Below, piece after piece: positions 511 to 36,009 of a DNA stretch of 64,000 nt. Below the pieces are notes generated by a model. That model saw only the letters and a list, made by a program, of their open reading frames with translations, ran no database searches and had not been told where the DNA came from. The stretch spans positions 10,230,001 to 10,294,000 of the forward strand of contig CM052832.1 in NCBI GenBank assembly GCA_028534125.1. The letters are read 5' to 3'. Position 1 is the first letter of the stretch, and each line of letters begins with the position of its first letter. Made by a program: the position numbers and the translations under genes. This DNA comes from Lama glama. Taxonomy: Eukaryota.

Positions 511-1053
511 TTGGCAAAGCTATAGACAGCAGTGACTGTAAGCAGCTAGCATATTTAATATGCACACTACACAATATCTTAAAAAGGAGAATTTGGGACT
601 TTTCTTTGTGTTATACATAATAAAAGAATCATGGTCCCTTCAGATAATTTTTGTTTGTATTAACATATGTATTCTTGAATTTCTTCTTCATCCTTATTCT
701 CCTTGACATCAGCCACTCTGACAAATCCTGAAAGCAGGAACATAAAGAATAATATAAAAACAAAGAATTTCCTTAGCAATTACAAATTTAACTCATGGCC
801 TGGAAAAGAAGATTTGCTGGGCTCTAAAGCAAGAAACTATATTCTTTCCTCTCTTTTTCTTGCCCACATCTTATCATTTACCTTCTTAGATATTACATTG
901 TGATTTCTAAGGCCTTCTTTCTCCCTTAGTGACCAACCAGCTACACCAAGGGAACAATCTATTTAAGCTGGGACCAAGGAGGAACTTTCTATGGCTTAGA
1001 TGCTGAAACAAAGGGCTGAGAGAGGTTGAACAATATAAGGGGTCTCTGTCTGT

Positions 1054-16000: not shown

Positions 16001-19000
16001 CATCATTCATTATAAACTTTCTTTGTACTCTTTTTATGAAATTCCTGCTATGTGCGTAACACTGTCTCCTCACTACCACCATGGATTTTCTTAAACTTCA
16101 GTAACATTGTCTCCCTTGTTCACTGTCTCCTCCAGCACAGGAACATGCACAAAGGGAAACTCAGGACATAATTTTTATTAAATAACTAGAAAACTTTTCC
16201 AGATAATCAGTCAGCCTCAAAGAGAACAGTGGGCTTACTTAAGTAAATCATTACTCAGCTAGCATTACAAGTCTTTAAGAGCTCTTCTGGTAGTGCCAAA
16301 ATTTATTTCTGGAAGGCAGGTTTCTTTTTTAAAGAAATAAAGCTAGCATGATAATGAGAGACCTATACTCAATCAACCACCAAATTACTAAGTGCAATGA
16401 TATCTGTAATTGGTTTACTTGAGGTTTTTAGGGGACCTGCCTTTTAATAATGGTGGGAGAAGCACTGTATCCAAGTTTACATCATCCTTGACTGTACATA
16501 CATAAAGGTCCTGGTCTTCAGAGCTGGCAGGAGAAATACTATACATTGTGGATTTCATGGCATTGGCTGTAGGAAAAGAAGACTACGACTGAGGAAAATG
16601 CCATGCTCAGAGACTGTGGTTTTAAAGATACAAAAATACAAGAATTTAGTCAAGAAACTAAAAGGATTAAGATGAAAGGAGCTATAAGATTTAAAGTGGT
16701 TTACCCACCCATCCTGCCGGTTCTCTAATTTTCTCTTAGAAATGAACAACATTTTCTGTACCACATGGTATCCAACATTCTCACCCTTCCTGTTTACTTT
16801 CCAACAGCCCTTGATTCTGCTACCTCACAGCTCCAGGATGCCTTTCTGGATTTTACACATACTTCTCTCTCTTTCCTCCTCCCTTCTTCCATTCCTCATT
16901 CAGATTTACCACGTCACCCTTCTCATCAGTAACGTGCAATTCTCTATTGGACTCTCAAGTTTATCAATCCTTTCTAGTGGACTCTGATGTTTATAAATCC
17001 TATTTTCCTATCTTCACCTCCTGGGCTGCTCAAAAAGGAACTAAAGTAGATTGACTCAATTACTTTACCTGAGGCAGGGATTTAGTGTTTTCAACATAAC
17101 TACATATTATCTGTATAGTACACTTAGCCAGGAAGGCCTAACCTTGCTTATGATGCCGGCAGGGAATAGACACATGCTTCATAAGGGCCAGGTGATGCCA
17201 TGGTCAAGAATGAACTCCAGCAGCAGGACCAGGGTAGAACCCTGGGGTACTCAGCTTACCTGAGAGGGTCTCCCACTTGCTAGTCTCCACCTCCTCCTTT
17301 TGGAGGTCATGAAAGAGCAATATGTTCTTAGAGAGAAGGTCCTGGCATAAGACCTCACAGTAAAGGGGGTTTCCAAAGCACCTGCGGAGAAGGTAGCTGT
17401 AGAGAGGTAAGTAGGGGATTAAAGATGTCCACTGACTAAAGATGTCCACTTGAAGAAAGCCAAGCATAAGGGTATTTCATACTGAGGAATATTTCTTCTG
17501 TTGTTAAAGTCAGTTCTTGATGATATACACTAACAGAAGGAAGCCTCGGCATAAAAATGTTAAAAAAAGTTTCTGATTGGTTTTGAAATGTATTTTGGCA
17601 GTAACTTTTCTCTTAACTATCTTCCTTCTATTGATGTTAAAAGGAACTAACATCCCCTTGCTAAAGGGCCTGACAAAAACTGGCCTGACCACACATAATG
17701 GACATGTAAAGCAAGTTATCCAGGTCCTAACAGACCTGTGAAAACCTGGATGAACGGCCCAGGGAGATAGTCCTTTACTGGGTACTAGGAGACTGTCTAC
17801 CTTTAAATCTAGTTTTGGGCCTCACCATGGTCGCTAACGTCATTCTCTCCCTCAACTTTGGTGAGACCTGAGCCTTCTCACTTATATTATGGCACCGGCT
17901 CCTCCCTTAATGAAGTGCCCAGCTGGTCCTAGCCACTCACATCTGTAGCTCTTGGGGGATGCTCACCACCCCCAGTTCCCAACATGCCATTCTCAGCAGT
18001 GAGGTCTCTGCCAACTTCAAAATGGGTACAAGGATGGCCTGAGGGCTCTGCAGGAAGTGCTGGGCCCAGCCACACAGGGCGAAGGTGGGGGTCAATGTCA
18101 TCACCATGATGATGGGCACACTGGAGAGCAATGTTCCCAAAAACTCCCAGGAAGCTGCATCCATATACTGGGCCTCGTCAATGAGGAATATCAGCGGTGT
18201 TTCCCTCACTGCCTGGAAATAACAGCAAGGAAACAATGACAACCTCTGATTAGAAATGAAGTCACTTTATTTTGAAATCTACCATAAATTTCCCATCAAC
18301 AATTTTAAGTAAAATGTCAACATAGGCTGGGATTTTCAGAGTAAAATGTATCCTAAGTCCAGGTAATATTTTACTTCATAAATATAAAATATAGCCTGTA
18401 TATCTAATTCCTAAAGAAATCTACCGAGTTTCTTTGAACAAGAAAATACTCTAACTGAAACATGAAATGAGCATCAAAATATTCTCCAAATCAAATATGA
18501 AGCTTTCAAATATTTCATTTTGGCAAAAGCTTCAAACTGTGGGAATTCATAGTATTTTAAACCAGCTTCCAGACCAGGCTGCATATGAGAATCACCTAGG
18601 AGTGCTTGCTAAAACTACCAGTTACCATGCCCCACTCATATACACTTTAAAAAAATACCTCCTTCCCACCAAAAAAAATGAATAAAATTAAAAAAAATCT
18701 AAATATATATATACAAAATTTTTTAAAAAGATAGATACAAACAATGAAGAAATGCCTAAGTCAAGGTATGATAGAGATAGATTAAAATGAGCATAAACTA
18801 TCTGCACATGTTAAGAGTTGACGGCATGTAGCAAAAGTACCCACCTTCTGAAGCACTTGAAAAAAACATGCTTTAACCTTCTTTTGTCTGGCCAGGTCAT
18901 CCATGCGTGAAACTCTGAAGGATAAGGGAAACTGACCGGGAAAATTATTCAGATATTATCTTTCAAAATAACAATCTAATAAAAATATACAGGTTCTCAA

Positions 19001-22000
19001 AAGGGAACAGAAAATGATTCTATTTTGAGTGAGAATAGCTTTCCACAGGACTAGGCATAGGGTTACAAATACTAATCCAACATCCATATACAGTTCAGAG
19101 GGCAGACTGAAAGTCCACTGGTAGTTAGAGAGAGCGCGCTCCTTTCCATACCAGACTCTGGCAAATCTTTAAAGGATCATGACTAAGGAGTAAAGTGACA
19201 GGTGAGACTTAGTAATGTCAATTTGGACAACTCCAGTACCCCCATGCTTCCAAGTATACTATAATGAATGTATGCATGACACTTGTGAGAAAGAATCGCA
19301 GTGGATGTCTCCAACACTGTGTCAGGCTGGCACATGAGCTATCATGGACCTGAGAGCCAAAGTGAGCCTATTACTTGACTGCTTTGGCCAGGGTCCCAGG
19401 TAAGGCCTGGCTTAAGCAAGTGCTATGCTGAAGGATTGGACAAATTTTCATTTTTCCTATTTTTCACTCAATACAACATCCTGCATGCTGGGGTAGATTA
19501 GGAGAAGTGATGGAAGATGAATAAATGGAATTGTGGACCAAGGAATTCTTAGCCTACTCGCTGCTGGAGACCGCATAAATCCTAGACCACTGGAAGCTTT
19601 TGAGATTCAGATGCTAGTTCAAGTGACATACTCCATGGCCTGGGGTAGGGCAGGTAAGGTTAAAAAACAGAACACTGCAATTGACTCAAGAACACGTGGA
19701 TGTAATTGTTGGAGATGCTCGACTGGTCAGTATCACCTGGACAAATTTTAGCACTTTCACATTTACAATGCAATCTCTTATATATTACATCCTTTACAAA
19801 ATTCATGCAAAACCCATATAAAGTACTATCATCATCATTTCACCGTTGAAAAAAAACTGAGGCTCAGAGAGGCTAAGTGATTTGTGCCAAGACATACAGC
19901 TAGCAAGACTGAGAGTCAGTCCTAGAATCCACTCTTCTCAAAAAAGGAAAAAACCTGGGTTTTGGTGTCAAAGGCTTTTCAAATCTTGATCCTGCCACTC
20001 CTAACTATCTGTTCTTAAACGATGCATATACATATGGCCAACAGGTGTTAGATTAGAAGACAATCCTGGGTCCAACTATCCACCAAAAATACAAATAATC
20101 CAGTTCAGAGAGCTACTGCCTTCATTACCTTCACGAAGAAGAGGTCATTAAAAAGACAGTGAAGCGGTTCTTCCACCATTCCATGGAGCTGTTTGAAGAG
20201 GCACTCTTGCCGGTAACAGGCTGGGCATGTATCAATCTCAAAGAAGATAGCCATGAGGGTCTGGATGGCATAGAAGCGCTGCTTGGAATCTGCTTCCTTC
20301 AGCTTCAGTGGCAACACCCTGATGAATGTTACTGTGGTCACTGGGAGTCCCCTGATCCACAGAGAGGTTATTCACTCCACCAGCCCAATGATTCTGAATC
20401 TAACAACACAAGAGTCTCACCAACGAGGCAAAGGAGCCCCAAAACAAATAGGTGCATAGCACAAGTCTTTACCTGTGTCCTTCTTTCTGGGCCAGGAAGT
20501 TTATTTCAGCCAACAGCTGACTTTTTCCATAGCCTTTTCCACCTTCATACAGAACTGCTTGTCCCTTCTTCAGGTGCAAACATCTCTGCTGTGCCATTTG
20601 GAAGGCTTCTAGTTCTTTCTCCCGGTCTGTAGAGAGACAGGGAGCACCTAACACCTGTGGTTTTTAGCAGACACTTATTTATTTGAATTAATTTACAAAG
20701 GTGATTCTCAGAATGGCTTCTCCCCCAATATCTTTGACAGAATCCCATTCTTTGATGAACCTTCACATCTCTTTCTAGAAAATCAACTCTTCATGATACA
20801 GAAATGTGTGTTGGGCTTGAGGGGCTTGCTCCAAAGCCCAAGTAATAACATTTAGAACAGTTAGGCAGCACATGGGCATGGAGACTATCATATCTTCTTA
20901 GCTTTTTGTAAAAATTTCCATTGTAACAATTTAGTGTTTAAAGTCTGTCACCACCACATGAAAATAATGGACGAATAGAAGTAGATAAAACAAAGATCGG
21001 GATATACAGTATGGGTGGAACAGTGTCGGTGCTATCTTTACTATTTCAGAATGAGAAATTTCCCCCTTAAGATGATCAACAACAAGCAGATCAGACCTCA
21101 ATAGCTTAACTCTGACTTACAAAGATTCTTACTAAATGTTGGCACTTCTCAGGCAAAGTGATAGGACCCAACTTGAAATTTAAACATTCAACATGGAAAA
21201 GAAATGGAAAATCCACTTCAAAATTAACAAATTCACTAATAAATCTATTTTTTAATAAAAGTTTAGAAGCATTTAGTCTCGCATTTTGTTTTTGAAATCA
21301 TATGTAACCATCTACAGCTGAAAAAAAATATGATTAAAGGTAAAAAAGAAAACTTACCTAACAATGGGTGATTTTGATTTCTCTCTCTGGCCAAATGTCT
21401 CTTCCCAAACATTCTGGAAAAAAGGACAAAGGGAAACATTTCAATTAAAAATAGATTGGGATGGATAGATAATACATCTCTAAATAGACAGAGGGCAAGT
21501 TGTCCTCATAAACAAGTATTTCAGACAACTAAAGAGGTCCGGAGTTCTGTACAAGAGTTTTTTAAAAAGTGAAAAAAATGTTTTTGGTGGGGGAAGGGGA
21601 GAAAAAGCATTGACTGCTCCAGGCTCAGGAAAGTAAATAGGTTGTGAAGTATACAAAGGAAAAAGAACATCTAGATTAGTGAGCTACTGCGATCCTCTTC
21701 CTGTTGGACAGCAAGAAGCTCACTGACACATAAAACCTGAAGCTCTCAGACACGAAACCCTCCACTTACGTTTCCTATTCTAGCAGGCCAGCACTAGAAG
21801 CATCTTTCTTTCTAATTTCATATAATCAAGCACTGATTATTCCTATGCCCTGCTACTATAAAGAGATGGGAGTGAAGTATCACATAATGACACTCACATA
21901 CATCTTCTATGGCCAAGATATTCATACATCTTCTCTGGGTTGGAGATGTTTTTCATCATTTTCTCTGGGAGCTTCTTGAAGTTATAAGCAGGTAGCATAG

Positions 22001-25000
22001 ATCTTAGATATGTTACCTCATCACAGGACACCAAACCTGGATAAGCAGTTATCATTCTTGCCAAAAGGCTCACTTTTGGGCCAATAACTGTATCAGGGAG
22101 AAGTAAAGAAAAGGATGGAGAATTTTTGAACCAACTCCTCCACCTTCACCCCTCTAACAAGTCACAGAGCTAACAGTCCAATGTCCTATTCTACCTGTAT
22201 ATTCGTGTCTTGCTACTGCCCCAACCATGCCACAGAATACTGGTCCATTGGTGATACTGATGGAAACAAGCCTGGGGATCAGAAAAACAACAGTGAGTAA
22301 ATATGCACTCAGAAGCCTCTAAGTCAGACACTAGACGTGCCACTCTCTGGATCCAGAAGTCTAGTTTAGAGCTCAAAATGGAAAAGGCCAGAAGCTGCTG
22401 TCAGTCTGCATCACGTGATGGGTACACAGTACTGAATATTAGGGAGATAGTCAAAAGGAGCAAAATGGTCCCTCCCACCTACAAAAGCCTAATCCTAATG
22501 AAGTATAGAAAATTTCCATTTTCCTTAGCGCAACTATGATAAGATTGGTTGGAATTTTTCAAATGGCCTTTTTTTTTTCCACTAGAAAACTATGGGGAAA
22601 GTGAATAGATTTGAAAAGTTATTTCTAATGTCAACACTAAGTCAGAGATTTGTTTGCTTGCCATACTTATTCAAGATGAATAAAACCTGTGTCATACATT
22701 TACACAATGCTTTAACATTTATAGAATACTTTAGTATATGCTACTAGTGTGAATATTTGTATCCTTCTTTTACACGTGAGGAAACTAAGGCCACAGAAGA
22801 GAAGTTACTAGCGTATAGCAGAGCTGGTAACGAAACCCAGATCGTCTGTCCTCAAATCCTGTGTGGATATTCCCCCAAAGGAACAGCATATATTACTAAA
22901 GTGATACCATTATAAAAAAAATAAATAAATAAAATTCAGTGATACCATTAAAAAGGCAGTAATACTGAAAAGGAACTTAGAGGCTTTCTGATCCAACTCC
23001 TTATTTTATAGATAAAAAGAGCAGGAGGTCAGTTCAGTGTGAATTCCAGAAAAATTAGTAGGGCTGGGAAAGACCAAAAGCGAAAGCCAAGAAGGAGAGC
23101 ATTAACCAGCTGTGGTCCCTCCTATCTAGGTTATTGCCCCACAATTTGTTTTCCCATGCCGCCCCTCCCCACAGACAGGCAGCCTTCCTTCCACATACAG
23201 ATACATTATTTTTATATTCATTTCCACATCTGCTTGTTCCTTCGCAATGTTCTTGAATCTTGCTATGCATATTGTGTCCCTCCCCTTCTCCTACCCCACT
23301 GGATGGAAACTTGCATTCATTTCCCCTGGGTATCTGGTACACAGTTCTGTATCCAGTGATTCTTAACAGACTTTGTTTTCTGACTATCCTCAGCATGTTC
23401 CCTCTCTCCCCTTTGGGCAGATTCCAGATGCCCTCAACCCCTGCTACTTGCTACTGCCTCCTTCCTTGCCTGAAGAGCCCCCTGGGCCTGAGAAGTTCCT
23501 CTCTGCCCCACCTTCCTCCTCACTTGGTCTCAGCAAGATTCTCCCAGCAGAAGCTGAAGATGCTGAAGGAGCTCTCCAGGGCATGTGCACACTCATCTGG
23601 CTTCTTATCCCCAGGAAGTCCGAAAACACAGAGGAACATGTAGCCCTGAAATAGATGACAGAGAAAGAAAACGGAACTTGATCTGGGGAAGAAATATGGC
23701 TTGCGTCCACTGCACCAATTTCCCTTAGTGAACCCAGACTCCTTCCAGATTTCTTCCTAGCTGGTTTTCTGTTAGGAATGTAGGGTTCTATAAGATTCAT
23801 GAAATGGGCACGCTAGGCCACAGCAACACGGACATTTTTTTAAAAAGAAGAAGAAATAAAATCTTAATTTAGCTATTTAAAGAACTGAAATTCAAAACAT
23901 GAGAAAAACTGATGTCAAGAACTTTTCAAAAATTCAGTTTTTAGTGTCCAACTTAAGCTAACTCTATCTGCTTCTATTTTCTTCACCTAGAATGTCAAAT
24001 ATTACAATACTGCTCTTTTTCAAGCTCCTAAATTTATGAGAAAGATTTGATTACATATACTTTACTAATAGAGCCATAAAAACATTCTTTATGCCTTCAG
24101 AAGGATTTTTTTTCAACAACGATAGATTTAAAAAGGATATGGAGAGTAACCCTTAGTTACCTTGAAAATTAAATTAACTAGAACATCTCTTTCCTTAACT
24201 ATTACTAGTTGAAGTTTTAATGTAATATAGCTTGCTACAAAATAAGCAGCCGAGGATCTGACTTATGCCTGTGTTATGTGAGAAATAAACTGGTGATACA
24301 AGACTATTATTCCTCACTCACCTTTAATGCTGATGTGTCAAATTCCTTTGTACTTACTTTCTCAAACATAAAGATCCGGCTCAGCTGGCCACCCCCTTTC
24401 TCTATCACTGTGGAGATGTATAAGGCAGCCTCCTGGATAAGATGACACAAATGCAACATCCATTCTGTCTTGCGGAGCTCTAGGCTGACCAAAACCGTAG
24501 TCACGGTACGGAATTCAGATATATACTCCATAGGCTGCCCTTCATCAATCTACAAAGACACAGTGAGTTACCTTGTCTGTATCTTCAACTTTCACTATCA
24601 TGCTTAGGCATTTAAATTCAATATTCCATGGTAAACATGAGAAAATAATTTATGGATGTTAGACAAAAAACTTAAAACTCAGGTTCAAGCAGTATGGAAG
24701 ATATACCAACCAGTACACTTGGAGTTAAAACTGTTTGACTTTAAAACTAATTCACTGATGAAATTTGCTATGCTTTTATATTTCCTTTCTAAGACTTAGT
24801 TTGGTATGTCCAATTCTCCTAGCCATTAAATCGCTCACTAAGGGATTCACATAGATTCAGATACATGTAATCAACACATATTTACCAAGCATATACTCTA
24901 TACCTGTTTATAGTGTACCAGCTTCTAGAGGGACAAACATAAACAAATATGGCTTCTGCTTTCTAGGACTGAGAAATCTAAACTTGTAAGACATGTCACT

Positions 25001-28000
25001 GTAGTAACTGATGCAGATGAGAAAATCTGCTGGTATTAAAATGGGCAGCAGGAGGTGAACTGGATCAGTACAAATGATCATCACATATAAATGTACATTC
25101 TTTACACAAACACACAGTCTACACGATGACTCAAGAACTACAAAATAACCTTCTTCAGAAGGCTTTTCATTATGTGCTTCCTCAGGGTTTGCTCAAGTGC
25201 AGAGTCTGGATCCAACTCCAGGGCTGTTCTTAGAATGTCTGAGAAAAGGAAAACAAACAAAATGTCTCCATGCATGTGAAAAATTAATCTTTGAAATTTT
25301 GGTATTGGATACAAAGGGCCAAGTAACTTACCAGCACTTGTCCGGTAATGTGGCAGGTAATCCAGGCACTTGTCAAAATGCTCATCGAAATCAAATGGGT
25401 CACTGATCCGCATATCTCTTAACTACAGAAAGGAACTGCTCAATTCTGTGCCCACCCACCAACTGGATTACCTTTGGTTCCTTAACAGAGGGGCTGAGGA
25501 TGCCAACTCCCTTGTTTATCTCTTATCTTTCCAGCCTTACTGTTCTGCCTCGTCTATCTTCCTGGGAGAATATTCCCTGCCTCCCTCTAAAATAGAGTTC
25601 CAACATTTGTTGGTTTGGTCAGGCCATGTGTGAGTACCACCAGAGCACTTCCCCGGGTAGTAGGAAGGCCTCTGCAGGACGTTCAATGGATGTGAGCAGC
25701 CTCCTACCTTCACAGCTTCGTCCTCCCTCATGATTTCCACTTCAAACATGTACTGTTCACAGAGCTTCCAGCAGTTCCAGGACAAGACAATCTCATTTGC
25801 CTGAGCCAAACGCTGAGCTAACTGGACACCGTCCACATCCTGCCCAATCACCAAGAGGTACTGTCGCTGCTCGTCTCCAACAATAACCTGGGAAATCCGT
25901 CCTGCAGACAGACCTATCCAGGAAAAAGGAGACACGTGATGAACAGCCAAACTCAGTTGGAAAACTTTGCAAAGGGCGGGGTCTGGAATCCTCACATGGT
26001 TTTATGCATCATGCCAATCTCGTTATTGTCATGAAGTATTAGGTGAGCGCAATCTCAAAAGTAACACCTTGCTCCAGATTTCTTTGTCTTAAACACACCT
26101 AGAGACAGACATTCAAATAAGCCTGAGTTGTATGAGGGAAGAAAAAAGAGATCTTAGGTGTCTGAGAGTTTTGTTTCTAAATTGTTCTTCTAAAGGACAG
26201 CTAGGTCCTGATGGCAGAGACCAAATGGTTATGCTCAGAAACTGCTGACCACACCAGTCCTCCTCACATGTAAGCAGCACTGAGACAGTAGACAATCACT
26301 ATTTTACCAGGCATGGGCTCTGCCATACGCTTTTATTCTGCCTCCTGTTTTTCTTGCCCTGGATTTCTTACTGCTAATAGGGCTGAAAAACTGGTTTGCT
26401 TGCCAGAAAAGAAATGCCTATAACCAAGAGAAGTCTGCCCTTAGGTAAGTCAGTCACCCAATCTACACTAAAAACAAGCGAAAAGTAGTTTTAAAAGAAC
26501 GGCAGAGACATATACTTTTAGCCAAGACAGAATAACAGGTAGTAAATTTACCACAACACCTGGAACAATCATGGAACCGGGAAAAAAGACACGAAACAAC
26601 AGAAACAACAGTTCTCAAGATACTGGCCATCAAGTAATTAAGGACAGTATACTTGAGAGATGAGAAACAAACAAGGTGAACCCTCTGATACCCCAGCTCA
26701 CTGCCTAGAGAGTTTCCAGTACACAGCTTGGAGAGAAGAAACCCAGGTATAGCCTGGAGGGGTCCCCGAGTTGAGGAGACAGAACTAGGAATCTGAGGGG
26801 CCAAGGTGGTTAGAGTTTGTAGGGCACTGTGACTACTGGAGAGTAGACAGAGAGAACTCCAGAGAACTGGGTCTCCCTCGGTCTTTAGCTGAGTACTGAT
26901 AAGTGAATCAATCTGAGGAAACAACTTGAGGCTACAGAAAGAACCACCTGAAAAGATTAGAGGGAACAATCTTTAATATCAGACAGGGCCGGGTATAGTT
27001 CCTATTCCCACTAGCCAGAGTATCAAACTTAATAATTCACAGGACATTAGGTACAGTACCCGGAAGGGGTTTGACTCAGGAACAGGGCAAAACTAGCTCT
27101 GGACTAAACACTGCTCTGGCCCCTCCAACAAAGTTTGAAAGTAAAACCTGAAAGTATCAAGTCAACTACATTCCAGAACTAAGTTCAAGAATATTTATAG
27201 AAATATTTAAAAATTCAACACTCAACAAGGTTAAATTCTACAATGTCTGGCACCTACCAAAAATTACGAGGTGTGCAAAGAAACGGGAAAATATGATTCA
27301 CAATTAGAAGAAAAATCAATCAGTCAAGCCCAGTGCAGAATAATACAAATGACAGAATTTGGAGATCAGGACATTAAAAAAGCTGCAACTATATTCTACA
27401 TATTCAAGAACCTAGAGAAAAGACTGAACAAGTAGGGACATGGAAGATATGGTATCTTCATATGGATGAAGACTATCAGGCTTGAGATGAAAAATACGTT
27501 AGATTGGATCAAAGGCAAATTAGACATTGCAAAAGAGAACATCTGTAAATTTGAAAACACAGCGATAGAAACCATCCAAAAATGAAACACAGGGAGAAAA
27601 AAGACAAAAAAAAATAAACACAGCATCAGTGAGTTGGACAATTTCAAGCAGCCTAATATGTGTGTAGCTAGACAGAGGAGGAGGAAGAGAGAAAAAATTA
27701 TTTGAAGAAATAATGGCAGAATATTTTCTAAATTTTACAAAAACTAGAAGCCTATAGATCCAATAATCTCAATAGGTCCCAAGCATAAGAAAGATGAAGA
27801 AAACTGTACCAAGGCACATGATAATCAGATTGCCTAAAATTAGTGACAGAGAAAAAAATTTTGAAAACAGCTAGGGTGGAAAAGGGAGAGACATTATATA
27901 CAAAGAAACAAAAATAAGGATTTCTTGTTGGAAACATTACAAGCTAGATGTCAGTAGAATGACAGCTTTAATATAAGAAGGGGTGGGGGAAGCCCCTGTC

Positions 28001-31000
28001 AATCTAGAATTCCATACCTAGTAGAGGTATCTTTCAAAAACGGGTGAATTTTTTCCAGACACACAAAAGCTGAACTAACACATCTCCAGCAAACCCACAT
28101 TATTAGAAATTTTAAAGAAAGTTCTTCAGACAGACAATGATAAATATTGGCAAGAGACTGGAACCTTCATACACTGCTGGTAGAAATGTAAAATAGTACA
28201 ACCACTTTGGAAGAAATATTAGCAATTTCTCTAAAAGTTAAATACGCATCTACTATATGACCCAGGCCTTTCATGTCTAGGTGTCTGCCCAAGAGAAACA
28301 TATGGATATGTCCATACAAAGACTTGTACATGGATATTCATAACAGCTTTATTTGCAAGTCAAAACCTGAGAACCCAATTGCTGATCAAAAAGTGAATAA
28401 ATAAATTNNNNNNNNNNNNNNNNNNNNNNNNNNNNNNNNNNNNNNNNNNNNNNNNNNNNNNNNNNNNNNNNNNNNNNNNNNNNNNNNNNNNNNNNNNNNN
28501 NNNNNNNNNNNNNNNNNNNNNNNNNNNNNNNNNNNNNNNNNNNNNNNNNNNNNNNNNNAAAAGTACCTACTATATGATATTACTTATATAACATTCTTTA
28601 AAAATGCAAAATAATCTCTAATGACAGAAAGGAGAGCTGTGGTTGCTTGGGGATGGGGAGGCGAAGGATGAGAGGGAGAGTTTATAAAGGGGCACAGGAA
28701 ACTTTAGTGAGTGCTGAATGTTCATTATCTTGATTGTGGTGATGGTTTCAAAATTGTATAAATATGTCTATGTACAGTATCAGATATGAATTATCTATCA
28801 ATAAAACAAAAATCAGAAGAACTAAAAAAGGATGGTAGGACAGGATAGATGCCATATAACTCAGAATATGATTCTTCACTACTGACTAGTCCTCAAAATA
28901 CAAATGAATAGCTGGAGTTTTGTGTCTAGAGCTAACCCTCCAATCCTGACTCTGCCACTGGTGAAACTTTCGCCCCTGTGTACAGCTTTTTTCCTATAGT
29001 ATTGTATTATATTTTTGATTATGTAATACAATGACATAGCTCAAAAACCAAACTACATAAAGAATATACATTAAAAAGTCTTGATTCCATCTATATACCT
29101 ATCTACACTATTTTCCCCTAATAGGTGACTTTTATTAGTTTCTTATATATCTCTCCAGTGTTTCTTTATACAAATATAAATAAGAAAAATTATTATTTTT
29201 CCTACTTGCATAAAAGGTAGCATACTAAACACAGTGCTTTGCATCTTGCTTTTTCTCATCTATGTTTTGGAGATACTGTTATATCAGAACATCTTTTTTT
29301 TTTAAAGCTGTAGAGAATCTCAGTGAATAAACATATTATTGTTTATTTAACCAGTCTACTATAGATATTGTTTTCAACCTTTTATCACAATCTGTATTGC
29401 AATAAATAATCTTATATACATGATATTTAATGCACAGTCAGGTATACCCATAGGATAAATGTTCAGAAGTGGGATTGCTGGGCTGAAGAATAAATGCATT
29501 TGTAATCTGGGTAGAGATGACTGGATCACCCTCTACAGAAGTTACACCACTGCTGACTCCCATCAACACTGTGTAAGAAGGCTTATTCCTCGCAGCCTCA
29601 CCGACAGTGTGTCCAGCATCTGAATTTTTCCATATTTGTAGGTAGGGAATGATCTCAATGTACTTTCAATTGGCATTTTTCTTATTACTAAGTTGACCGT
29701 TTTTTCACACATTACAAGAGATGACTTCTTTGTTTATGTGCTATTTATTCATTCTTTTGCTCAGTTTTCTCCTAGAATGTTAGTCTTTTCTTAACTTCTA
29801 GGTGTTCTTTCTATAGAAAAATTTACCCTTTGTCTACATGATATGAGTCGCAAATATTTTTTTTCCAAGTTGTCATTTATCTTTAAAATTTTTAATGTTT
29901 CCTGCCCACCCCCCCCCAACTTATCACTCTTAATAGCTACTACCTATCTTTAACTGCAGGTCCTGCCCTTCTCTGGTGTGGCAGATGCCAAATTTCTCCT
30001 GTATCTCCAGACTGCATTTTGCCACCAGGGTAATGATGTCACTCAGTTGATTCTGTTCCACTGTCCAGAGTGCAAGGAGCACATTCCCTGTAGACACACA
30101 AGACAGGCTGACAGAGATCAAATATTTGAATTCACTTGCCATGGCAGAACCCTCAATAATGCAAAAGGTATCATGCAAGGTGTCACACAAGGTTTCTCGC
30201 CCTATACATTATGTTAGGTTAAAATACTGCCTTAATCCTCAAAAACCATTGAGCATATAAAAACATGACTAAGTAGAAGCTGAAATGTTCCTAAGGTTTA
30301 AAGCTATTTTTGGTAATTCTTTCCCCACCAGTATCCTAACAGAAGGGGCGGGGTACTAGCTAAGAGGCCCACAAAATATATGTTTACATTCAAGTTGAAT
30401 TTTAAGATTTTAAGTGGTTTCATTAAGTTTAAATGAAAAGACAGGCCAGCTCTGTGGCACACAGCTGTAAATGATCACAAGAGTTCTCCAGATAGGAGAC
30501 TCTTGACTCCTCTCCCTCTCCTATATGTAGCTTCTGTTATTAATGACCAAGCTTCTCATAAGTTTTCTCACGAATGCTTTAAAGGCACTTATTTTTCTGT
30601 CAATCTGAACAAACTGTAAAATACATGGGAGCTTAACATGGACAAGGCTTTTCCATTAGACTGGGAGACCCTTTGAGGCAGAGACTGTCTTCCTCATCTG
30701 TGTTTCCTCAGGGCCCAGCACTTAGAAAAATAATCAAACAATGCTGAATAAACATGCCAAATTCCACCTAAAATACAGTCTTCCTCACTTCAGGGTGCTT
30801 TAAATATTCAGAAAAACTGAGAAATACCTGTAATATTTAGGATATCCCCTCCAAAACAGAGCACATCTGAAATCAAGCAAGAGGGGAAAATGAATCAAAA
30901 TCAGATATGCTGGATCATGGCAGAATCACATATGATGAAAAGAATGGCCTTCTGAGTTTCCCTTTGTATCTTTTCTGGTCAATTTGTTCATTCCAAGGTT

Positions 31001-34000
31001 CAGACTCCCTCTTCCTTTCCCCTAGCTTCTCCTCAGATATGTCTGTTCTTATACCCAACTTCTCTAAAAACAGAAGGAAAGCCCTCTTGGTATCTTCAAA
31101 GCCATCCCCCTATTTGTGCTCTGGATCCTAGTCCCCCTCACCCTCTCAATAACTTCACTCCCTTCCTTATGTTCTTTCTGTGCCATCATTCCCATTAATA
31201 TCTTTGTAAAAAAAAAAACACACAACAAAATTAACCCACCTATTCTTGACTCTGCCTTCTTCTCTAGCTATGAGCTCAATTTTTCTGTTATATTCCCAGC
31301 CAAAAGAAAAAAATTCTCAGTTTATTCCAATCTAAACTTCCATCTCTACCACTTCACTAAAATTATCAAAACCACCCAAAGCATTCATCTTGCTATATTT
31401 AGTATTTTTCTGATATCACTGTATTTGACACCTTTTATTTTCAATCCACTAGGGCAGCGCTCTCCTTCTAGAGACACTATTGCCCTTTTGGCTTCAGGAA
31501 CACCAAATAGCCTACCTGACTGACTGCTTCACAGTTGCTGTTGTAGGTTCTTTCTCCCTAATCATAATCACAATCTCCCCTTGGAGTTCTTTACAGTCCC
31601 CCCATGTGGACTCAATCAGTTCTTAACTTTAAATAAAATCTTTATGCCATCAATTCACTTTTCATCTCTAAAGATCTATTCTCTAAGCTCAATCACAGCT
31701 AACTTCGTTGCCTCACTTGACTGACTTACTAACATCTCAAACTCAATATATTAAAAATAGAACCCTTGACTTTCTTCCTCAAAGCCTAGTCTTTCCCATC
31801 TCGGTATGTGACATCACCTTCAATTCGGTTACATAAGCCAAAAAAGTTGACAATTGTTTTCCTCACCATTTCCCACGGAAATCCAATACATTAGAAAATC
31901 CTGTCTGTTGAACTGCAAAATATATTTCAAGTCAGTTCATCTCCATACAGCTCCCTTCATTACCACACCTTAAGACTAATAGTTTCAGCCTTTACTGCAC
32001 ACTGAAATTGTCTGTAAGAAAAATCCTTAGTCCTGGGCTTACCCCAAGATATTGATTTAACTGATATGGGGTGAAGTCTAGACATCAGGAGTTTTAACAG
32101 CCTCCTAAGTGGTTATCTAACGTGCTGCCAAAGTAGAGAACCACTAACCTCATCTAAATCTCTAACTTCTCTCCACAATTATTCCAATTGCCTCTTCCAG
32201 CGTCCAGTTTTACCATCTACCTTCCATCAGTTCCCTATAAAACAATCTCCATGAGGGCAGGTACCATGTCTGACTTTCCTGTGTATTTCTAGTACCCAGC
32301 AGTTCCTGGTATTATAAATACATGCATGATACATAGTTTCTATCTCCAGGAGACAGCTAAAATGAGCTTTAAAAATGTAAATCAGATCACATCACTCCCC
32401 TGCTAGAGTCTTTCAACAGTTTCCCTTCATACAAAAATAAATAATCCAAACTTCTATGTTCTATGGAGCTTGATGCTCTCCAGTCTCACCTCAAGCCACT
32501 CTTCTCCCTGCTAACTATGCTCTAACCACACTGGCCTTTTCAGTTCCTAGAACATGCCAAGCCTTCTCCACCTCAGAACCTTTTTACTTGGCATTCTTCT
32601 GCCTGAAATGCTCTACCCTTAGCTCCACACACAGCGTTCCTCACATCCGTTATGTCTCAGCTTACACAGCACCTTCTCAGAGATGTCTCCTGTGACCACC
32701 CTAATACAGAAACTCTTTCACCCTACAATTCTTTTCTTTTTTCCCACAACACCTTATTTATTTCCTTTGTAGACTACATACTCTGAAATTATCTTGTTTA
32801 CTATCTTCCTTCCTTGGAACCTACAAGAGGGCAGGTACTGTGTCTTGTTTTCCCATGTATTTCTAGTACTCAGCAACTCCGTTATAATACATACATGATA
32901 CATAATTTCTATCTCCCCCTTTCCCCTAAACTTGATGACATCCATTGAAAGACCTCAGGCAGAATCCTCAGTGGTAAGGGATTAGTCAAACAGCCACTTT
33001 ATGTGGCTTAAGGAGAGGCCACAAGGTAATTATTCTGGTGAATCTCAGAATGATGGAGTAACTATGGGACACTGTCAGTAAAGGAAGGGAATGTACATAC
33101 ATTAGTACTAAAGGGTGCAGAGCCAGTATAATTTGTTAGGTAGACCTAACTAGACTGAAAACGCCTCAAAAGTAGGTTTCTGTACCTCCTGCACCTATTA
33201 CGGTGTATGTCATAGTAGGTACTCAAAACAAGTTTACTGCACAAATAAGTTTTTCTCCTAGATTAGGCAAATATCCACAAGCTTAATACATGGCAGAAAA
33301 TAAAACACTCACTCCTACTTCACAGGATCAAAATGCAGTAACCAAATGGGAAGGTATGAATTGACACAACAATGTAAACTGACTTATACCTCAATAAAAT
33401 AAAATTAAAAAAAAATGAGGTGTGTTGTAAATTATACCTGATATACACACATGAAGCACATTGTATTTTTGTTAAAAGAGACAGCCTTAGGAATACTTCA
33501 TTTCAAAATAAAATACAAACATGCAGAGTTAAAATTAAAATTAGCATTTCCCCTCCTCTTTCTGAACACTGGGTCAATAGGATGTGAGATTGGGTAGAAT
33601 GGCAGGTATATGGAAAGATCTAGCTTGTCAGTGGCAACCTTAAGAAATAAAAGATGAGTGACACTAAAGGAATGACCTTCAGTATCCGTTTTAAGCACCT
33701 CAGGCCTGTTTCTGTTACAAACCCTCAGAAGCCCAGCACCACACTTCCTTGTTCCCGTACAAGGGTCACTCACGCTCCACGATGTCACTAATGTAATAAC
33801 TGAAGATGTGGGCCAGTTTGTCCATGTCATGTTCCGACTTGCAGCTCAGGCTGAATCTGTCCATTAATGCTGTAAACCCTGACCAACAAAGCAAAAATTA
33901 CTGTTAGCTGCAAATCCCAAACTTTTAGGCCTTAATCTCGCATTGGAACAGTGTAAAGAAAGCAGATCTCTTTAATATGAGTAATTTCACAATTCTTCTT

Positions 34001-34935
34001 CTTCATTTTTGAGTAATTTCTCTACTCTTTAATATGGTGTTACTTAGCAAGTACTCAGGGCCAGGCTGGTTGCTGCTGCCTCTAGGAGTCCAGAGGGCCA
34101 GCCTTCCCATGTTTCCAGGAGCTGCAGATGGTGAAGATTCACCCACAAGAGCCTTTTCCATCGGAATGCAGCTACTGCTTTCCCGCCACACCCTCTTAAG
34201 ACTCTCTGACCAAGAGAAAGGATTTCCCCAGATATGAAGAGCAGAAAAACCAGTAACAAGATTAAAGCTTCATGGAGAACTCATATGGTAAGCTCCTCGA
34301 GGACAGGCACCTGAATCACTCATTTTCATATTCATGACATAAACTCCCTAAGTATTTGTTAAATGAACGACCCTCCTAGTAGCTGCCAGGTCTCTTAACA
34401 CCTAGCACAATGGCGGGTACATACTTATGGACTCAAAGAATGAATTAATTGAGTGAATAAAATCACTAGACGAGGCGGAATACTTATTGGAAAACACTTG
34501 GGTTCAAAGTGTGCTGTATGGCCCCGAAAAAGTCCATTCCCTTTTCTGAGCCTCAATTTCCTCATCTCTGAAGTGAACTCCAGGGCTACGTCAGGTTAGC
34601 TTCTTGCTCTGAAAATGACCCTCGGTTTCCGGCGGAGGCGGCGGGAAATGCGGTGAAACCGCGCTTGCTTTGCTCGCTCCGGAGCCAGGCCCATAACCGC
34701 AGCGGCCCCTACGAGCTGAGGCCCAACGGTTGCCCCTCCCGCAGGTCGGGAGAGCAGCGGGCCTCCTCTCTCCCTCACCCGTCACGTGGACGCCAAGAAG
34801 GACGCCCTGGGCCGTGGCGAGCTCAGGTTCCGATCCCCGGGGCTTCCTGAAGACCAGCAGGTCAGGAAGCAGCGCCGCCAACCGGGCCTCTACGGGCCAC
34901 AGAGGCGGCGCCACCACCCGCTCGCCGGTCGCCAT
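1054..34935 (-). CDS. ADCY10P1: Adenylate cyclase type 10-like (soluble AC paralog; intact ortholog of human pseudogene ADCY10P1), 31 coding exons, ~1625 aa
   Basis: Hand-spliced exons on the minus strand: 34935-34779, 33878-33774, 30866-30828, 30087-29944, 25913-25708, 25422-25332, 25238-25150, 24549-24358, 23645-23524, 22271-22195, 22087-21898, 21413-21358, 20626-20473, 20318-20129, 18931-18845, 18212-17941, 17396-17260, 16566-16441 (GC donor), 14214-13945, 13084-12755, 10566-10503 (least certain), 9293-9074, 8725-8600, 6200-6028, 5456-5300, 3902-3698, 3608-3512, 3068-2950, 2703-2586, 2141-1943, 1419-1054. All phases are compatible. The ATG is in a perfect Kozak context (GCCGCCATGG). Peptides are collinear with human ADCY10 (e.g. 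LAALLPDLLV, FGGDIL, LLALW, FLCVFGLPG, RHEYTVIG, YEGGKGYGKS, IDEAQ, CFNMGQITLAKK, GHLDFSIKLG). It lies immediately downstream of NFYA, like human ADCY10P1. The symbol refers to the human ortholog; no official symbol for an intact copy is known to me. Confidence 0.9.
4300..4900 (+). mobile_element. LINE-2 3' fragment
   Basis: L2-type text (tgtcactcct..., cagatgtcacct...ctttccctaccacc, ...caaatatttgttga); boundaries approximate. Confidence 0.6.
7410..8500. mobile_element. Old LINE-1 3' fragments (two pieces, opposite orientations)
   Basis: L1M-type 3'UTR text (agctttactgagatatagctgacatataacattg..., gatctacactcttaacaactttcaaatatacaatac) followed by an A-rich L1ME-like segment. Confidence 0.6.
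9660..9850. mobile_element. MIR SINE
   Basis: Core ttttacagatgaagaaattgaggctcagagag...aagtgactt. Confidence 0.65.
12400..12560. mobile_element. MIR SINE
   Basis: actgagcactaaccatgtgc...actcatttagtcctcacgacaatcctatga...gaggttaagtaacgtgcccaaga. Confidence 0.65.
15010..15520. mobile_element. Possible ancient ERVL-type solo LTR
   Basis: TATA-like (ctattataaga) and AGTAAA signal in an LTR16/33-like context; recognised by eye only. Confidence 0.3.
15545..15755. mobile_element. MIR SINE
   Basis: tttaatcctcaaccaaccccatgaggtagg...ccccattt...gatgagaggactaag. Confidence 0.65.
19770..19935. mobile_element. MIR SINE
   Basis: aaactgaggctcagagaggctaagtgatttgtgccaag. Confidence 0.6.
26460..28810 (+). mobile_element. 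Degraded LINE-1 (5'UTR/ORF1 remnants and 3' end), interrupted by N-gap 28408-28558
   Basis: ORF1-like A-rich text (tatttgaagaaataatggcaga..., ccaaggcacatgataatc...), then the L1 3' region (gctggtagaaatgtaaaatagtacaaccactttgg..., ttcattatcttgattgtggtgatggtttc). Confidence 0.75.
29000..29900 (-). mobile_element. Old LINE-1 (L1ME-like) fragment
   Basis: T-rich, with gaagtgggattgctggg and tttaaccagtc motifs. Confidence 0.55.
31100..32920 (+). mobile_element. LINE-2 fragments with an inserted MER5-like hAT element (~32000-32145)
   Basis: L2 text (catctcaaactcaat, aaaatgtaaatcagatcacatcactcccctgct, cttctcagag) and MER5-type text (ggggtgaagtctagacatcagg...gagaaccact). Confidence 0.6.
33358..33416 (+). 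mobile_element. Very short young LINE-1 3' tail with poly(A)
   Basis: gaattgacacaacaatgtaaactgacttatacctcaataaaataaaattaaaaaaaaa resembles cetartiodactyl L1 3' ends. Confidence 0.5.
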
Positions 34936-35170
34936 GGCGGCGACGGGGCTGCGCGCCGAGCTACCCGAAACAGGGTTCCTCCGCGAACCAGCCAATCCTC
35001 AACGACAGCCCTGATGGGTCCCTCCCACCAGCCAATCAGTGCGGGCTAGCTTGGAGCAGCGTCAATCGAAAGCCGCGGCGGGCTCTGCGCCACCTGTTTC
35101 CCAGCGCTTTGGCCCCTCGCGCTGGCTTCCGGGGAGGGGACGAGCAGAAGGTCGGCAGGACAGCGCGTTT
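34600..35170 (-). promoter_or_regulatory. CpG-island promoter/exon 1 of the ADCY10-like gene with two CCAAT boxes
   Basis: Locally CpG-dense. CAGCCAATC occurs twice (CCAAT at 34992-34996 and 35032-35036), just upstream of the ATG at 34935. Confidence 0.75.
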
Positions 35171-36009
35171 CAAGGAATGTAAGCTGACGGTTTTAAAATC
35201 TCCGTGAAACGTGGTGAAGATACTTCTACGATGAAGCCTATCATCTGGGATAAGTATCAGTAGAGTGGTCTTTTTCCGGACAGAAACTTGGGTCATCTCA
35301 GTTTGTAAGGAAAAGTTCCATTGTTACCTGCCTAAAGCAAACTCAGGATGGCTTTTTAATTTACCGCCTTTAGATTAAGACTGTTTAACAGTGTCAGTCT
35401 TTTTCCTTAATTGTTAGCTTCTTCCATTTCTGATGTCTGCCAGGACAGGTCACTGGGTATCATGGGAGTATTACCCGGGGCTGTTTTGTCAAGTTCCCGG
35501 GCCCCTGACTTTTGTGTAATAAGGTCACGTTTGTGGTTGCCCATCTGTCGCTCAGATCTGTGAACACAAGACAGTAAGAGGACGATTATGTTGTGGATTA
35601 ACAGAAATGCATGTTTTCCTGCATAAATAAAAACAAAAATCTAAAAATTACATCTTCACTATCTTTACTTCTACAGTATCTTATAAATCAATGCTGGTAA
35701 CTAAAGGGCTAATTTTACTCATGGAATTACTTCATCGCGTTTTGATTAATACTTAAACGGTAAAACCAAATGGATGATCAATCCACAGGCGACAGGAAAC
35801 ACCTCCTCAGGAGGGTGAGAGGGCCAAAAGTGAAGGAAAAGAGATCAAGGGGATACACACAACTAAGAGGCTGGACACTCCCAAGTCTTGACACACTGTC
35901 CACAGAGCTCATGTCTGTCTATAGAGCTCAAAATATCAACACTATAAACATAGAACCCAGGGGATGCAGACTCCTTAATATTGAAGACACTTTTTAGCAT
36001 TTTTATAAA

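What the first reader, a model, noticed from the sequence alone, without database searches (positions are those of the whole stretch)
22056..34788. The paralog is a pseudo-cyclase: both metal-binding aspartates and the catalytic Asn are replaced
Seen, aligned to human sAC numbering: D47 (FVDISG) -> H50 (GVHVTG, codon 34788-34786); D99 (FAGDALL) -> N102 (ITGNVLL, 30085-30083); N412 (KVNLAAR) -> S414 (KVSLLAR, 22070-22068); K334 -> R335 (24378-24376). The equivalents of K144, T405 and R416 and the surrounding fold residues are retained. Established: class III cyclases need the two Asp to bind the catalytic Mg2+/Ca2+ ions. Inference: the protein cannot make cAMP but keeps the fold and part of the nucleotide pocket. 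It could act as a nucleotide-sensing or scaffold domain, or as a modulator of ADCY10. An automated 'adenylate cyclase type 10-like' label would miss this.
Basis: partly seen in the sequence, partly recalled or inferred. Interest (0 to 1): 0.9.

Follow-up and report, generated by a model that had tools for sequence, protein, structure and literature searches.

The report
Conserved catalytically dead soluble-cyclase paralog
This window holds an intact second copy of the soluble adenylyl cyclase gene whose metal-binding catalytic residues were replaced long ago and then kept unchanged across mammals, so it is very probably a conserved "dead enzyme" with some other job, missing from humans and apparently from mice.

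Summary
On the minus strand, 34935..660, lies an intact 32-exon, 1594-aa paralog of ADCY10 (soluble adenylyl cyclase). It carries H50, N102, R335 and S414 where human sAC has D47, D99, K334 and N412. K144, T405 and R416 are kept.

The assembly gap (28408-28558) lies inside intron 4. Exons 4 and 5 abut human residues 145 and 147 with the split codon G146, so no coding sequence is missing.

The changes are neither base-call errors nor local decay. All 30 therian orthologs compared have H47 and N99, and 28 of 30 have S412. All 42 ADCY10-type sequences keep D, D and N.

The dead catalytic region is at least as conserved as the live one: 91.5% against 88.8% mean identity in 66 matched placental pairs. 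Of 19 pocket positions, 18 are near-invariant within the paralog.

The lineage predates the mammal-sauropsid split. Turtle and crocodilian relatives keep D99 and mostly have E47.

Best reading: a selected pseudo-cyclase with a remodelled pocket that no longer needs metal, attached to a P-loop (STAND-type) ATPase. I found no paper describing this.

Not done: dN/dS, read laying, structure prediction, and any search with the joined protein model.

The parts
660..34935 (-). Whole coding region of the ADCY10 paralog ('adenylate cyclase type 10-like'): 32 exons and an intact 1594-aa reading frame from ATG 34935-34933 to the stop ending at 660
   Evidence: Spliced model guided by the camel ortholog P0099. 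All introns are GT-AG except one GC donor after exon 18, and there is no internal stop. The model is 98.1% (catalytic region) and 97.5% (C-terminal region) identical to P0099.
34779..34935 (-). Exon 1 (aa 1-52). His50 codon at 34788-34786, in place of metal-binding Asp47 of human sAC (motif GVHVTG against FVDISG)
   Evidence: H is invariant in 30 therian and 2 monotreme orthologs.
33774..33878 (-). Exon 2 (aa 53-87). It begins with the conserved GFTA phosphate-loop motif that anchors the D47 alignment
30828..30866 (-). Exon 3 (aa 88-100). Asn98 codon at 30837-30835, in place of Lys95; Thr100 in place of Ala97
   Evidence: N95 is also the state of turtle, crocodilian, gecko and the more distant outgroup ADCY10 sequences.
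29944..30087 (-). Exon 4 (aa 101-148). Asn102 codon at 30085-30083, in place of metal-binding Asp99. Lys147 codon at 29950-29948, equal to Lys144 and retained
   Evidence: N is invariant in 30 therians.
28408..28558 (.). Assembly gap (N run, 151 letters) inside intron 4. It touches no coding sequence
   Evidence: position. Searches show that exons 4 and 5 abut at human residues 145, G146 and 147.
25708..25913 (-). Exon 5 (aa 149-217). Gln179 codon at 25824-25822, in place of Arg176 (the bicarbonate switch)
   Evidence: Among 30 therians, Q in 26 and R in 4.
24358..24549 (-). Exon 8 (aa 278-341), start of the C2 half. Arg335 codon at 24378-24376, in place of base-recognising Lys334. Also Ser and Glu at human positions 298 and 300, and Glu at 339
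   Evidence: At position 334, R in 21 and Q in 9 of 30 therians.
22195..22271 (-). Exon 10 (aa 382-407). It ends with Thr407, equal to Thr405 and retained
   Evidence: T in 29 of 30 therians.
21898..22087 (-). Exon 11 (aa 408-470). Ser414 codon at 22070-22068, in place of Asn412. Arg418 codon at 22058-22056, equal to Arg416 and retained.
20473..20626 (-). Exon 13 with the Walker A motif GGKGYGKS (aa 518-525) of the downstream P-loop ATPase module
   Evidence: motif. Orthologs carry precomputed PF13191/PF13401.
17941..18212 (-). Exon 16 with the Walker B-like motif IFLIDE (aa 641-646)
   Evidence: A weak AAA_16 match on this exon alone (E 0.0049, below Pfam's cut-off).
34501..35250 (.). CpG-rich stretch over the first exon and putative promoter (GC 0.59-0.71, CpG observed/expected 0.82-0.93)

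Best explanation
The gene is the ortholog of the mammalian 'adenylate cyclase type 10-like' paralog of soluble adenylyl cyclase. Its two cyclase-homology domains still fold like sAC. The catalytic centre, however, has lost both metal-binding aspartates (D47->H, D99->N) and shows changes at K334 (R or Q), N412 (S) and R176 (Q). It therefore almost certainly cannot carry out two-metal-ion conversion of ATP to cAMP.

Shown here:
- The substitutions are fixed across therian mammals.
- The reading frame is intact.
- The dead domain is at least as conserved as the live ADCY10 domain.
- The pocket lining is almost invariant within the paralog.

Inferred:
- The pocket is still used. Replacing two carboxylates with His and Asn, while keeping K144, R416 and an Arg or Gln at 334, changes a metal-dependent acidic site into a neutral-to-basic one.
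- Such a site could hold a phosphate-bearing or other anionic ligand (a nucleotide is the obvious candidate) without metal and without turnover.
- I propose it acts as a ligand-sensing or regulatory head for the P-loop (STAND-type) ATPase and helical repeats that follow.

My confidence is about 0.85 for 'cyclase-dead and under selection' and about 0.4 for the ligand-sensor mechanism.
For: - Codons and alignment to human sAC numbering.
- Intact 32-exon, 1594-aa ORF with a CpG-rich 5' end.
- Orthologs in about 40 mammals, including koala, echidna and platypus.
- H47, N99, V48 and T97 are invariant and S412 is in 28 of 30 among 30 therians. D47, D99, K334 and N412 are invariant in 42 ADCY10-type sequences.
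- In 66 matched placental pairs, catalytic-region identity is 91.5% for the paralog and 88.8% for ADCY10. C-terminal identity is 81.0% against 79.2%.
- Of 19 pocket positions, 12 are unchanged from human and 18 are conserved in at least 28 of 30 paralog sequences.
- Changes at otherwise invariant ADCY10 columns cluster in active-site strands (45/47/49, 97/99, 296/298/301, 332-334/339/342).
- No conserved new acidic residue appears in the C1 metal-site segments.
- Residue roles come from PMC12250328 and PMC12867704 Table 1.
- Walker A and B motifs are present.
Against: - No activity or binding assay exists; death of the enzyme is inferred from residues only.
- His and Asn can ligate metals in other enzymes, so a single-metal or Mn-dependent residual activity is not formally excluded.
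- With 47% of catalytic-region columns invariant among therians, the invariance of H47 and N99 alone is not statistically special.
- Constraint was measured on proteins only. No ortholog DNA could be fetched, so no dN/dS.
- Expression in this species is unresolved.
- The paralog seems eroded in anthropoid primates and was not found in muroid rodents, so it is dispensable in some lineages.
- No structure was predicted, so three-dimensional neighbours of the site were not inspected.
Confidence: 0.75

Rival explanations
1. Pure scaffold. The dead cyclase domains bind no small ligand and are conserved only because they hold the protein's shape or dock protein partners. The pocket residues are conserved for packing at the C1-C2 interface.
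For: The pocket lies at the C1-C2 interface, so interface packing alone could keep it conserved. The two most ligand-specific positions, 334 (R or Q) and 176 (Q or R), do vary.
Against: Phosphate-contacting K144, R416 and the GFT loop are kept in 28-30 of 30 sequences although catalysis is gone. Substitutions at otherwise invariant columns are concentrated in the pocket strands and then frozen, which looks like remodelling rather than release.
Confidence: 0.25
2. Modulator of ADCY10. The paralog binds or competes with the active enzyme or its partners and tunes cAMP output, as many pseudoenzymes do for their active relatives.
For: The paralog shares the full domain plan of ADCY10 (PF00211 plus PF13191). 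That is a general precedent from pseudoenzymes (my own knowledge), and nothing here is specific to this pair.
Against: C1 and C2 of sAC pair within one chain, which leaves no obvious free dimer face (my own knowledge of the solved structures found). Humans, and apparently muroid rodents, run ADCY10 without this paralog. Catalytic-region identity to ADCY10 is only about 45%, and C-terminal identity about 32%. No complex prediction was run.
Confidence: 0.08
3. Residual or altered catalysis. His50 and Asn102 still hold one metal (for example Mn2+), or the site has changed chemistry, so the protein is a weak or different enzyme.
For: His and Asn are metal ligands in other enzyme families (my own knowledge). 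R416, K144, T405 and the phosphate loop are kept. H47 and N99 are invariant rather than drifting.
Against: Class III cyclases use two carboxylates to bridge two metal ions, and Asp47 and Asp99 contact ATP through divalent cations (PMC12250328). N412, K334 and R176 are altered as well. The mirror-image site has no Asn-Arg pair either: D173 and L177 occupy those places.
Confidence: 0.07
4. Lineage-specific decay or sequencing error: a young pseudogene, or miscalled bases in this assembly.
For: The assembly has gaps, and the locus is a pseudogene in human (PMC5940861).
Against: The 32-exon frame is intact and every splice site is usable. The same residues occur in about 40 independent genome annotations. 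The gap is intronic.
Confidence: 0.02

Closest known systems
Human soluble adenylyl cyclase ADCY10 (catalytic core structures 4CLF, 4OYA and relatives)
   Same: It has the same two-domain C1-C2 cyclase core followed by a P-loop ATPase and helical region. The catalytic region is 45.7% identical over 470 residues with no large indel. Single exons hit the solved structures at E 5e-16 to 2e-18. K144, T405, R416, the GFT loop, V406, V411 and A415 are kept.
   Different: D47H, D99N, K334R/Q, N412S and R176Q, plus F45G, S49T, A97T and F296L. It forms a separate clade (100/100 support) and is not the ADCY10 ortholog. It lies next to NFYA.
Human ADCY10P1 (transcribed pseudogene at 6p21, beside NFYA and the TREM cluster)
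   Same: The neighbourhood appears to match. An NFYA exon lies about 7 kb upstream on the same strand in the window. Papers place ADCY10P1 in the NFYA enhancer region and near TREM2 at 6p21 (PMC9107640; PMC5940861).
   Different: The human copy yields only untranslated transcripts (PMC5940861), whereas the window copy has an intact 1594-aa frame. Orthology to the human locus rests on neighbourhood and naming only. I did not compare human DNA.
Degenerate second site of class III cyclases (the C2 half of membrane adenylyl cyclases and of sAC itself, which forms the forskolin or bicarbonate pocket)
   Same: A cyclase-fold pocket lost its metal-binding Asp pair and was reused to bind a regulator instead of turning over substrate (my own knowledge, plus PMC12250328 for the bicarbonate site).
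   Different: In those enzymes one of the two mirror-image sites stays active. Here both are degenerate: the main site has H and N, and the mirror site has S298/E339 with D173/L177. The whole protein therefore lacks a canonical active site.
Turtle and crocodilian 'adenylate cyclase type 10-like' proteins (e.g. P0179, P0184, P0335, P0346, P0367)
   Same: They are the sister clade of the mammalian paralog (100/99 support). They share T97 (Crocodylus has A) and, in most models, T49, and have K or Q at position 412.
   Different: They keep D99 (E in Pelodiscus, T in one Terrapene model) and mostly have E at 47, so their metal site may still work. They also have S336 and T337, which mammals lack.

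Membership tests
Catalytically competent class III adenylyl cyclase (sAC type) | Two metal-binding aspartates in C1 (human D47 and D99) | tested here: not met
   His50 and Asn102 in the window. H and N are invariant in 30 therian orthologs.
Catalytically competent class III adenylyl cyclase (sAC type) | Base-recognising Lys334 and Thr405 in C2 | tested here: not met
   Lys334 is Arg in the window and R or Q in orthologs. Thr405 is kept.
Catalytically competent class III adenylyl cyclase (sAC type) | Asn412 and Arg416 pair in C2 | tested here: not met
   Asn412 is Ser (28 of 30 therians). Arg416 is kept.
Catalytically competent class III adenylyl cyclase (sAC type) | Formation of cAMP from ATP | not testable with these tools
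   This needs an enzyme assay on recombinant protein.
Class III cyclase homology fold (Pfam PF00211, sAC C1-C2 core) | Significant sequence homology across both domains to solved sAC cores | tested here: met
   Exons 4, 5, 8 and 11 each hit 4CLF/4OYA (E 6e-8, 2e-18, 3e-5 and 5e-16). Orthologs carry precomputed PF00211. Single exons alone do not reach Pfam thresholds.
ADCY10 ortholog group | Groups with ADCY10 of the same species in a tree | tested here: not met
   The window protein sits in a separate mammalian clade (100/100) away from camel, human, koala and platypus ADCY10. A single mammalian clade holding both genes is rejected (p-AU 0.0005).
Mammalian 'adenylate cyclase type 10-like' paralog group | Nearest relatives and clade membership | tested here: met
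   98% identical to the Camelus dromedarius 'type 10-like' protein P0099 over the catalytic region, and inside the paralog clade with 99-100 support.
Mammalian 'adenylate cyclase type 10-like' paralog group | Position beside NFYA (the ADCY10P1 position in human) | tested here: inconclusive
   An NFYA exon lies upstream on the same strand (Pfam CBFB_NFYA, E 2.9e-14). The human arrangement is taken from papers. No ortholog loci could be fetched.
Pseudoenzyme (conserved inactive homolog of an enzyme) | Catalytic residues lost, yet the gene is kept intact and constrained over long times | tested here: met
   Intact ORF. Orthologs range from monotremes to placentals. Catalytic-region identity is 91.5% against 88.8% for ADCY10 in matched pairs. 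Codon-level dN/dS was not tested.
STAND-type P-loop NTPase module downstream of the cyclase domains | Walker A and Walker B motifs | tested here: met
   GGKGYGKS at aa 518 and IFLIDE at aa 641. Orthologs have PF13191/PF13401. The single-exon Pfam match is below the cut-off.

The most novel reading that the evidence does not exclude
Most mammals carry a second sAC-like protein that has changed from enzyme to receptor. Its metal-free, basic pocket binds a nucleotide or other anionic metabolite and switches the attached STAND ATPase and repeat module. This would be a signalling device that has gone unstudied because it is a pseudogene in humans and appears to be missing in muroid rodents.
Probability: 0.3. 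Interest if true: 0.8.

Novelty: new variant of a known kind. Interest (0 to 1): 0.62.

Why it matters
Soluble adenylyl cyclase is treated as a single-gene system in mammals, largely because human and mouse have one working copy. Most other mammals, including livestock, pets and bats, appear to have a second, full-length, strongly conserved copy that cannot work as a cyclase.

This has four consequences:
- It changes how 'ADCY10' annotations should be read. Several database names call this paralog plain 'adenylate cyclase type 10'.
- Antibody and expression data in those species need the same care.
- Work on sAC inhibitors in non-model animals needs it too.
- It gives a natural experiment on what the sAC fold and its large, poorly understood C-terminal ATPase-repeat region do when cAMP synthesis is removed.

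The stepwise pattern offers a dated series for how a pseudoenzyme forms. Turtles and crocodilians have E47 and D99. Monotremes have H47 with G or R at 99 and keep K334. Therians have H47, N99 and S412.

Tried and rejected
- Exons 1 and 2 alone against solved structures found nothing useful. The D47 equivalence therefore rests on multiple alignments.
- Pfam on single cyclase exons found no family.
No ortholog DNA could be fetched, so no dN/dS and no check of neighbourhood in other species.
- The look-up of sequencing runs found four RNA-Seq runs from one study, labelled 'reproductive system metagenome'. They hold 44-46% of the sampled words of 21800-26000, where exons make up about 23%. This fits transcription with intron signal or DNA carry-over, and I do not count it as evidence.
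- Structure prediction was not run. The spliced protein has no reference, full orthologs exceed the 1200-residue limit, and the tool returns no coordinates with which to inspect the metal site.
- The joined spliced model was used only inside local scripts (alignments and trees) and was never sent to a search or folding tool.
- Complex prediction with ADCY10 was not run, because I do not claim that they bind.
- Literature searches for 'ADCY10P1', 'adenylate cyclase type 10-like', 'ADCY10-like', ADCY10 with pseudoenzyme, and sAC with paralog and pseudogene found no description of this paralog as a dead cyclase.
- A reversed active site in the mirror-image pocket was considered and rejected. It has S298 and E339 on the C2 side, and D173 and L177 where Asn and Arg would be needed.
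- A mammal-only duplication and a turtle/crocodilian-only duplication were both rejected by AU tests (p about 0.0005 each). Caveats: the groups were named after the tree was seen, and long branches are involved.


Full report
**What is in the sequence**

I built a spliced model using a full-length ortholog found by search (Camelus dromedarius 'adenylate cyclase type 10-like', P0099) as guide.
- It has 32 exons from the ATG at 34935 to a stop ending at 660.
- It has 1594 codons and no internal stop.
- All splice sites are canonical apart from one GC donor.
- The first exon lies in a CpG-rich stretch.

The window protein is 98.1% (catalytic region) and 97.5% (C-terminal region) identical to the camel protein. 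The genome is therefore a camelid or a close relative. It is not human.

The joined protein model exists only in my local scripts.

**The assembly gap**

The N run 28408-28558 lies inside intron 4. It starts 1385 nt after the exon 4 donor (29944) and ends 2494 nt before the exon 5 acceptor (25913).
- The in-frame part of exon 4 aligns without gaps to human sAC residues 100-145.
- Exon 5 aligns to residues 147-214.
- The codon split by the intron gives G146.
- The camel, horse, elephant and koala orthologs are also contiguous here.

No exon is hidden in the gap and the frame is kept.

**Equivalence to human sAC residues**

Single exons searched against solved structures hit only human sAC cores (4CLF, 4OYA and relatives), always without gaps. 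This gives:
- N102 = D99
- R335 = K334
- S414 = N412 and R418 = R416
- Q179 = R176

Exons 1 and 2 are too short and too diverged to hit on their own. H50 = D47 therefore rests on multiple alignments with human ADCY10 (P0202). There the flanking GVL and GFTA motifs line up with no gap in any therian sequence.

The roles of these residues in human sAC come from two papers. Asp47 and Asp99 contact ATP through the divalent cations, and Arg176 and Lys95 form the bicarbonate site (PMC12250328). A residue table lists Lys334 (base recognition), Lys144 (pyrophosphate), Arg416 (alpha-phosphate) and Asn412 (product release) (PMC12867704).

**Is it more than chance, error or local decay?**

A profile-free search with exon 5, followed by two searches with full-length relatives, returned 'adenylate cyclase type 10-like' proteins from about 40 mammals. 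These cover all placental superorders, koala, echidna and platypus. True ADCY10 from the same groups was also returned.

Site counts:

| Human position | 30 therian paralog sequences | 42 ADCY10-type sequences |
|---|---|---|
| 47 | H, invariant | D, invariant |
| 99 | N, invariant | D, invariant |
| 412 | S in 28 (G in koala, T in one) | N, invariant |
| 334 | R in 21, Q in 9 | K, invariant |
| 176 | Q in 26, R in 4 | R, invariant |

The 42 ADCY10-type sequences are mammals, turtles, crocodilians, lizards and more distant outgroups.

Of 108 columns invariant in those 42 sequences, the window protein differs at 27. These include all four named sites and cluster in the active-site strands: 45/47/49, 97/99, 296/298/301 and 332-334/339/342.

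Base-call error and species-specific decay are excluded.

**Is the dead domain under constraint?**

There is no dN/dS, and I used matched protein comparisons instead.

For 12 placental species that have both genes (66 pairs):

| Region | Paralog, mean identity | ADCY10, mean identity |
|---|---|---|
| Catalytic region | 91.5% | 88.8% |
| C-terminal region | 81.0% | 79.2% |

The paralog is the more conserved of the two in 82% of pairs for the catalytic region.

Against koala the two genes are similar (75-79% and 74-82%). Monotreme paralogs are much more diverged (54% against about 80%).

Of 19 positions that line the nucleotide pocket in sAC, the paralog consensus equals the human residue at 12. 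In 18 of 19 the paralog residue is kept in at least 28 of 30 therians.

So the pocket was altered and then frozen. This argues for continued use rather than a relic.

No conserved new acidic residue appears in the C1 metal-site segments.

The mirror-image pocket cannot substitute either. It has S298 and E339 on the C2 side, and D173 and L177 where the Asn-Arg pair would be needed.

**Age and order of events**

In a careful maximum-likelihood tree of the catalytic region:
- The mammalian paralogs form one clade (100/100).
- Its sister (100/99) is a clade of turtle and crocodilian 'type 10-like' proteins.
- Those same species also have a canonical ADCY10.

Trees that force a turtle/crocodilian-only duplication or a mammal-only duplication are rejected (p-AU about 0.0005 each). 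Two caveats apply: I named the groups after seeing the tree, and long branches are involved.

The lineage is therefore probably older than the mammal-sauropsid split. The residues suggest stepwise loss:
- Turtle and crocodilian copies mostly have E47, keep D99 and have K or Q at 412.
- Monotremes have H47 with G or R at 99 and keep K334; position 412 is N in platypus and S in echidna.
- Therians have H47, N99 and S412.

**What it most likely does**

Shown: an intact, conserved paralog with a sAC-like fold, no canonical metal site, and an intact P-loop ATPase motif pair downstream (GGKGYGKS and IFLIDE; PF13191 on orthologs).

Inferred:
- It does not make cAMP.
- Two carboxylates have been replaced by His and Asn while Lys144, Arg416 and Arg/Gln334 remain. 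The pocket has changed from an acidic, metal-dependent site to a neutral or basic one.
- Such a pocket could hold a phosphate-bearing or other anionic ligand directly.
- I therefore favour a ligand-sensing or regulatory head on a STAND-type switch (about 0.4).
- A ligand-free scaffold comes next (about 0.25).
- A modulator of ADCY10 and residual catalysis are each below 0.1.

None of these was discriminated here.

**Comparison with what is known**

The closest known protein is human ADCY10, but the window gene fails the membership tests for an active class III cyclase and for the ADCY10 ortholog group.

It belongs to the annotated but, as far as I could find, undescribed 'type 10-like' group.

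An NFYA exon lies about 7 kb upstream on the same strand (Pfam CBFB_NFYA, E 2.9e-14). Papers place the human pseudogene ADCY10P1 beside NFYA and the TREM genes at 6p21, with untranslated transcripts only. I did not compare human DNA.

Five literature searches found no paper treating this paralog as a dead cyclase. The library lacks most subscription journals.

**Limits**

- Expression in this species is open. Four RNA-Seq runs of one study hold 44-46% of the sampled words of a stretch that is about 23% exon.
- No structure was predicted. The spliced model has no reference, orthologs are too long, and the tool gives no coordinates.

Noticed in passing
window 41961-42134 (minus strand): An exon of NFYA lies about 7 kb upstream of the paralog's start codon on the same strand (Pfam CBFB_NFYA, E 2.9e-14). 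This matches the reported position of human ADCY10P1 beside NFYA.
   Followed up: partly
P0004, P0005, P0007, P0146, P0160 (primate relatives; no window coordinates): The paralog looks eroded in anthropoid primates. Orangutan has only 303-325 aa models and marmoset only 138-175 aa fragments. Cercocebus and Papio models lack the whole of exon 4, which holds the D99 equivalent. No muroid rodent copy appeared among the listed hits.
   Followed up: partly
window 30835-30837 (Asn98, human K95): K95->N is probably not a loss in this paralog. Asn at this position is also the state of turtle, crocodilian, gecko and the more distant outgroup ADCY10 sequences, and a 2026 paper reports K95N as common in non-mammalian sAC (PMC12867704). 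This bears on the neighbouring note s1-862819.
   Followed up: partly
window exon 8, 24358-24549 (human positions 298, 300, 339): The paralog has a conserved Glu at human position 300 (28 of 30 therians) and D339E, both on the C2 side of the mirror-image (bicarbonate) pocket. Position 298 is Ser or Asn. Whether this creates a new cation or ligand site is unknown.
   Followed up: no
P0102, P0112, P0118, P0003 (database names of orthologs): Several public records name this paralog plain 'adenylate cyclase type 10' or 'adenylate cyclase 10' (Camelus bactrianus, rabbit, Phyllostomus, Pteropus alecto). By residues and tree position they belong to the dead-site paralog group.
   Followed up: partly
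P0179, P0184, P0335, P0346, P0367 (turtles, crocodilians): Turtles and crocodilians carry a sister paralog with E47 (mostly), D99 retained, K or Q at 412 and S336/T337. It may still bind metal.
   Followed up: partly
P0354, P0361, P0368, P0362 (geckos): Geckos have ADCY10 copies labelled 'type 10-like', and Euleptes has two. All have canonical catalytic residues and group with squamate ADCY10, so this is a separate, younger duplication.
   Followed up: no
window 43263-43466, 46083-46227, 53405-53544, 60943-61234: There are four further assembly gaps upstream of the gene, in the NFYA region. I did not examine them.
   Followed up: no
window 16441-16566 (exon 18): The best-scoring model gives exon 18 a GC rather than GT donor. 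It is the only non-GT donor of the 31 introns, and I did not check it against transcripts.
   Followed up: no
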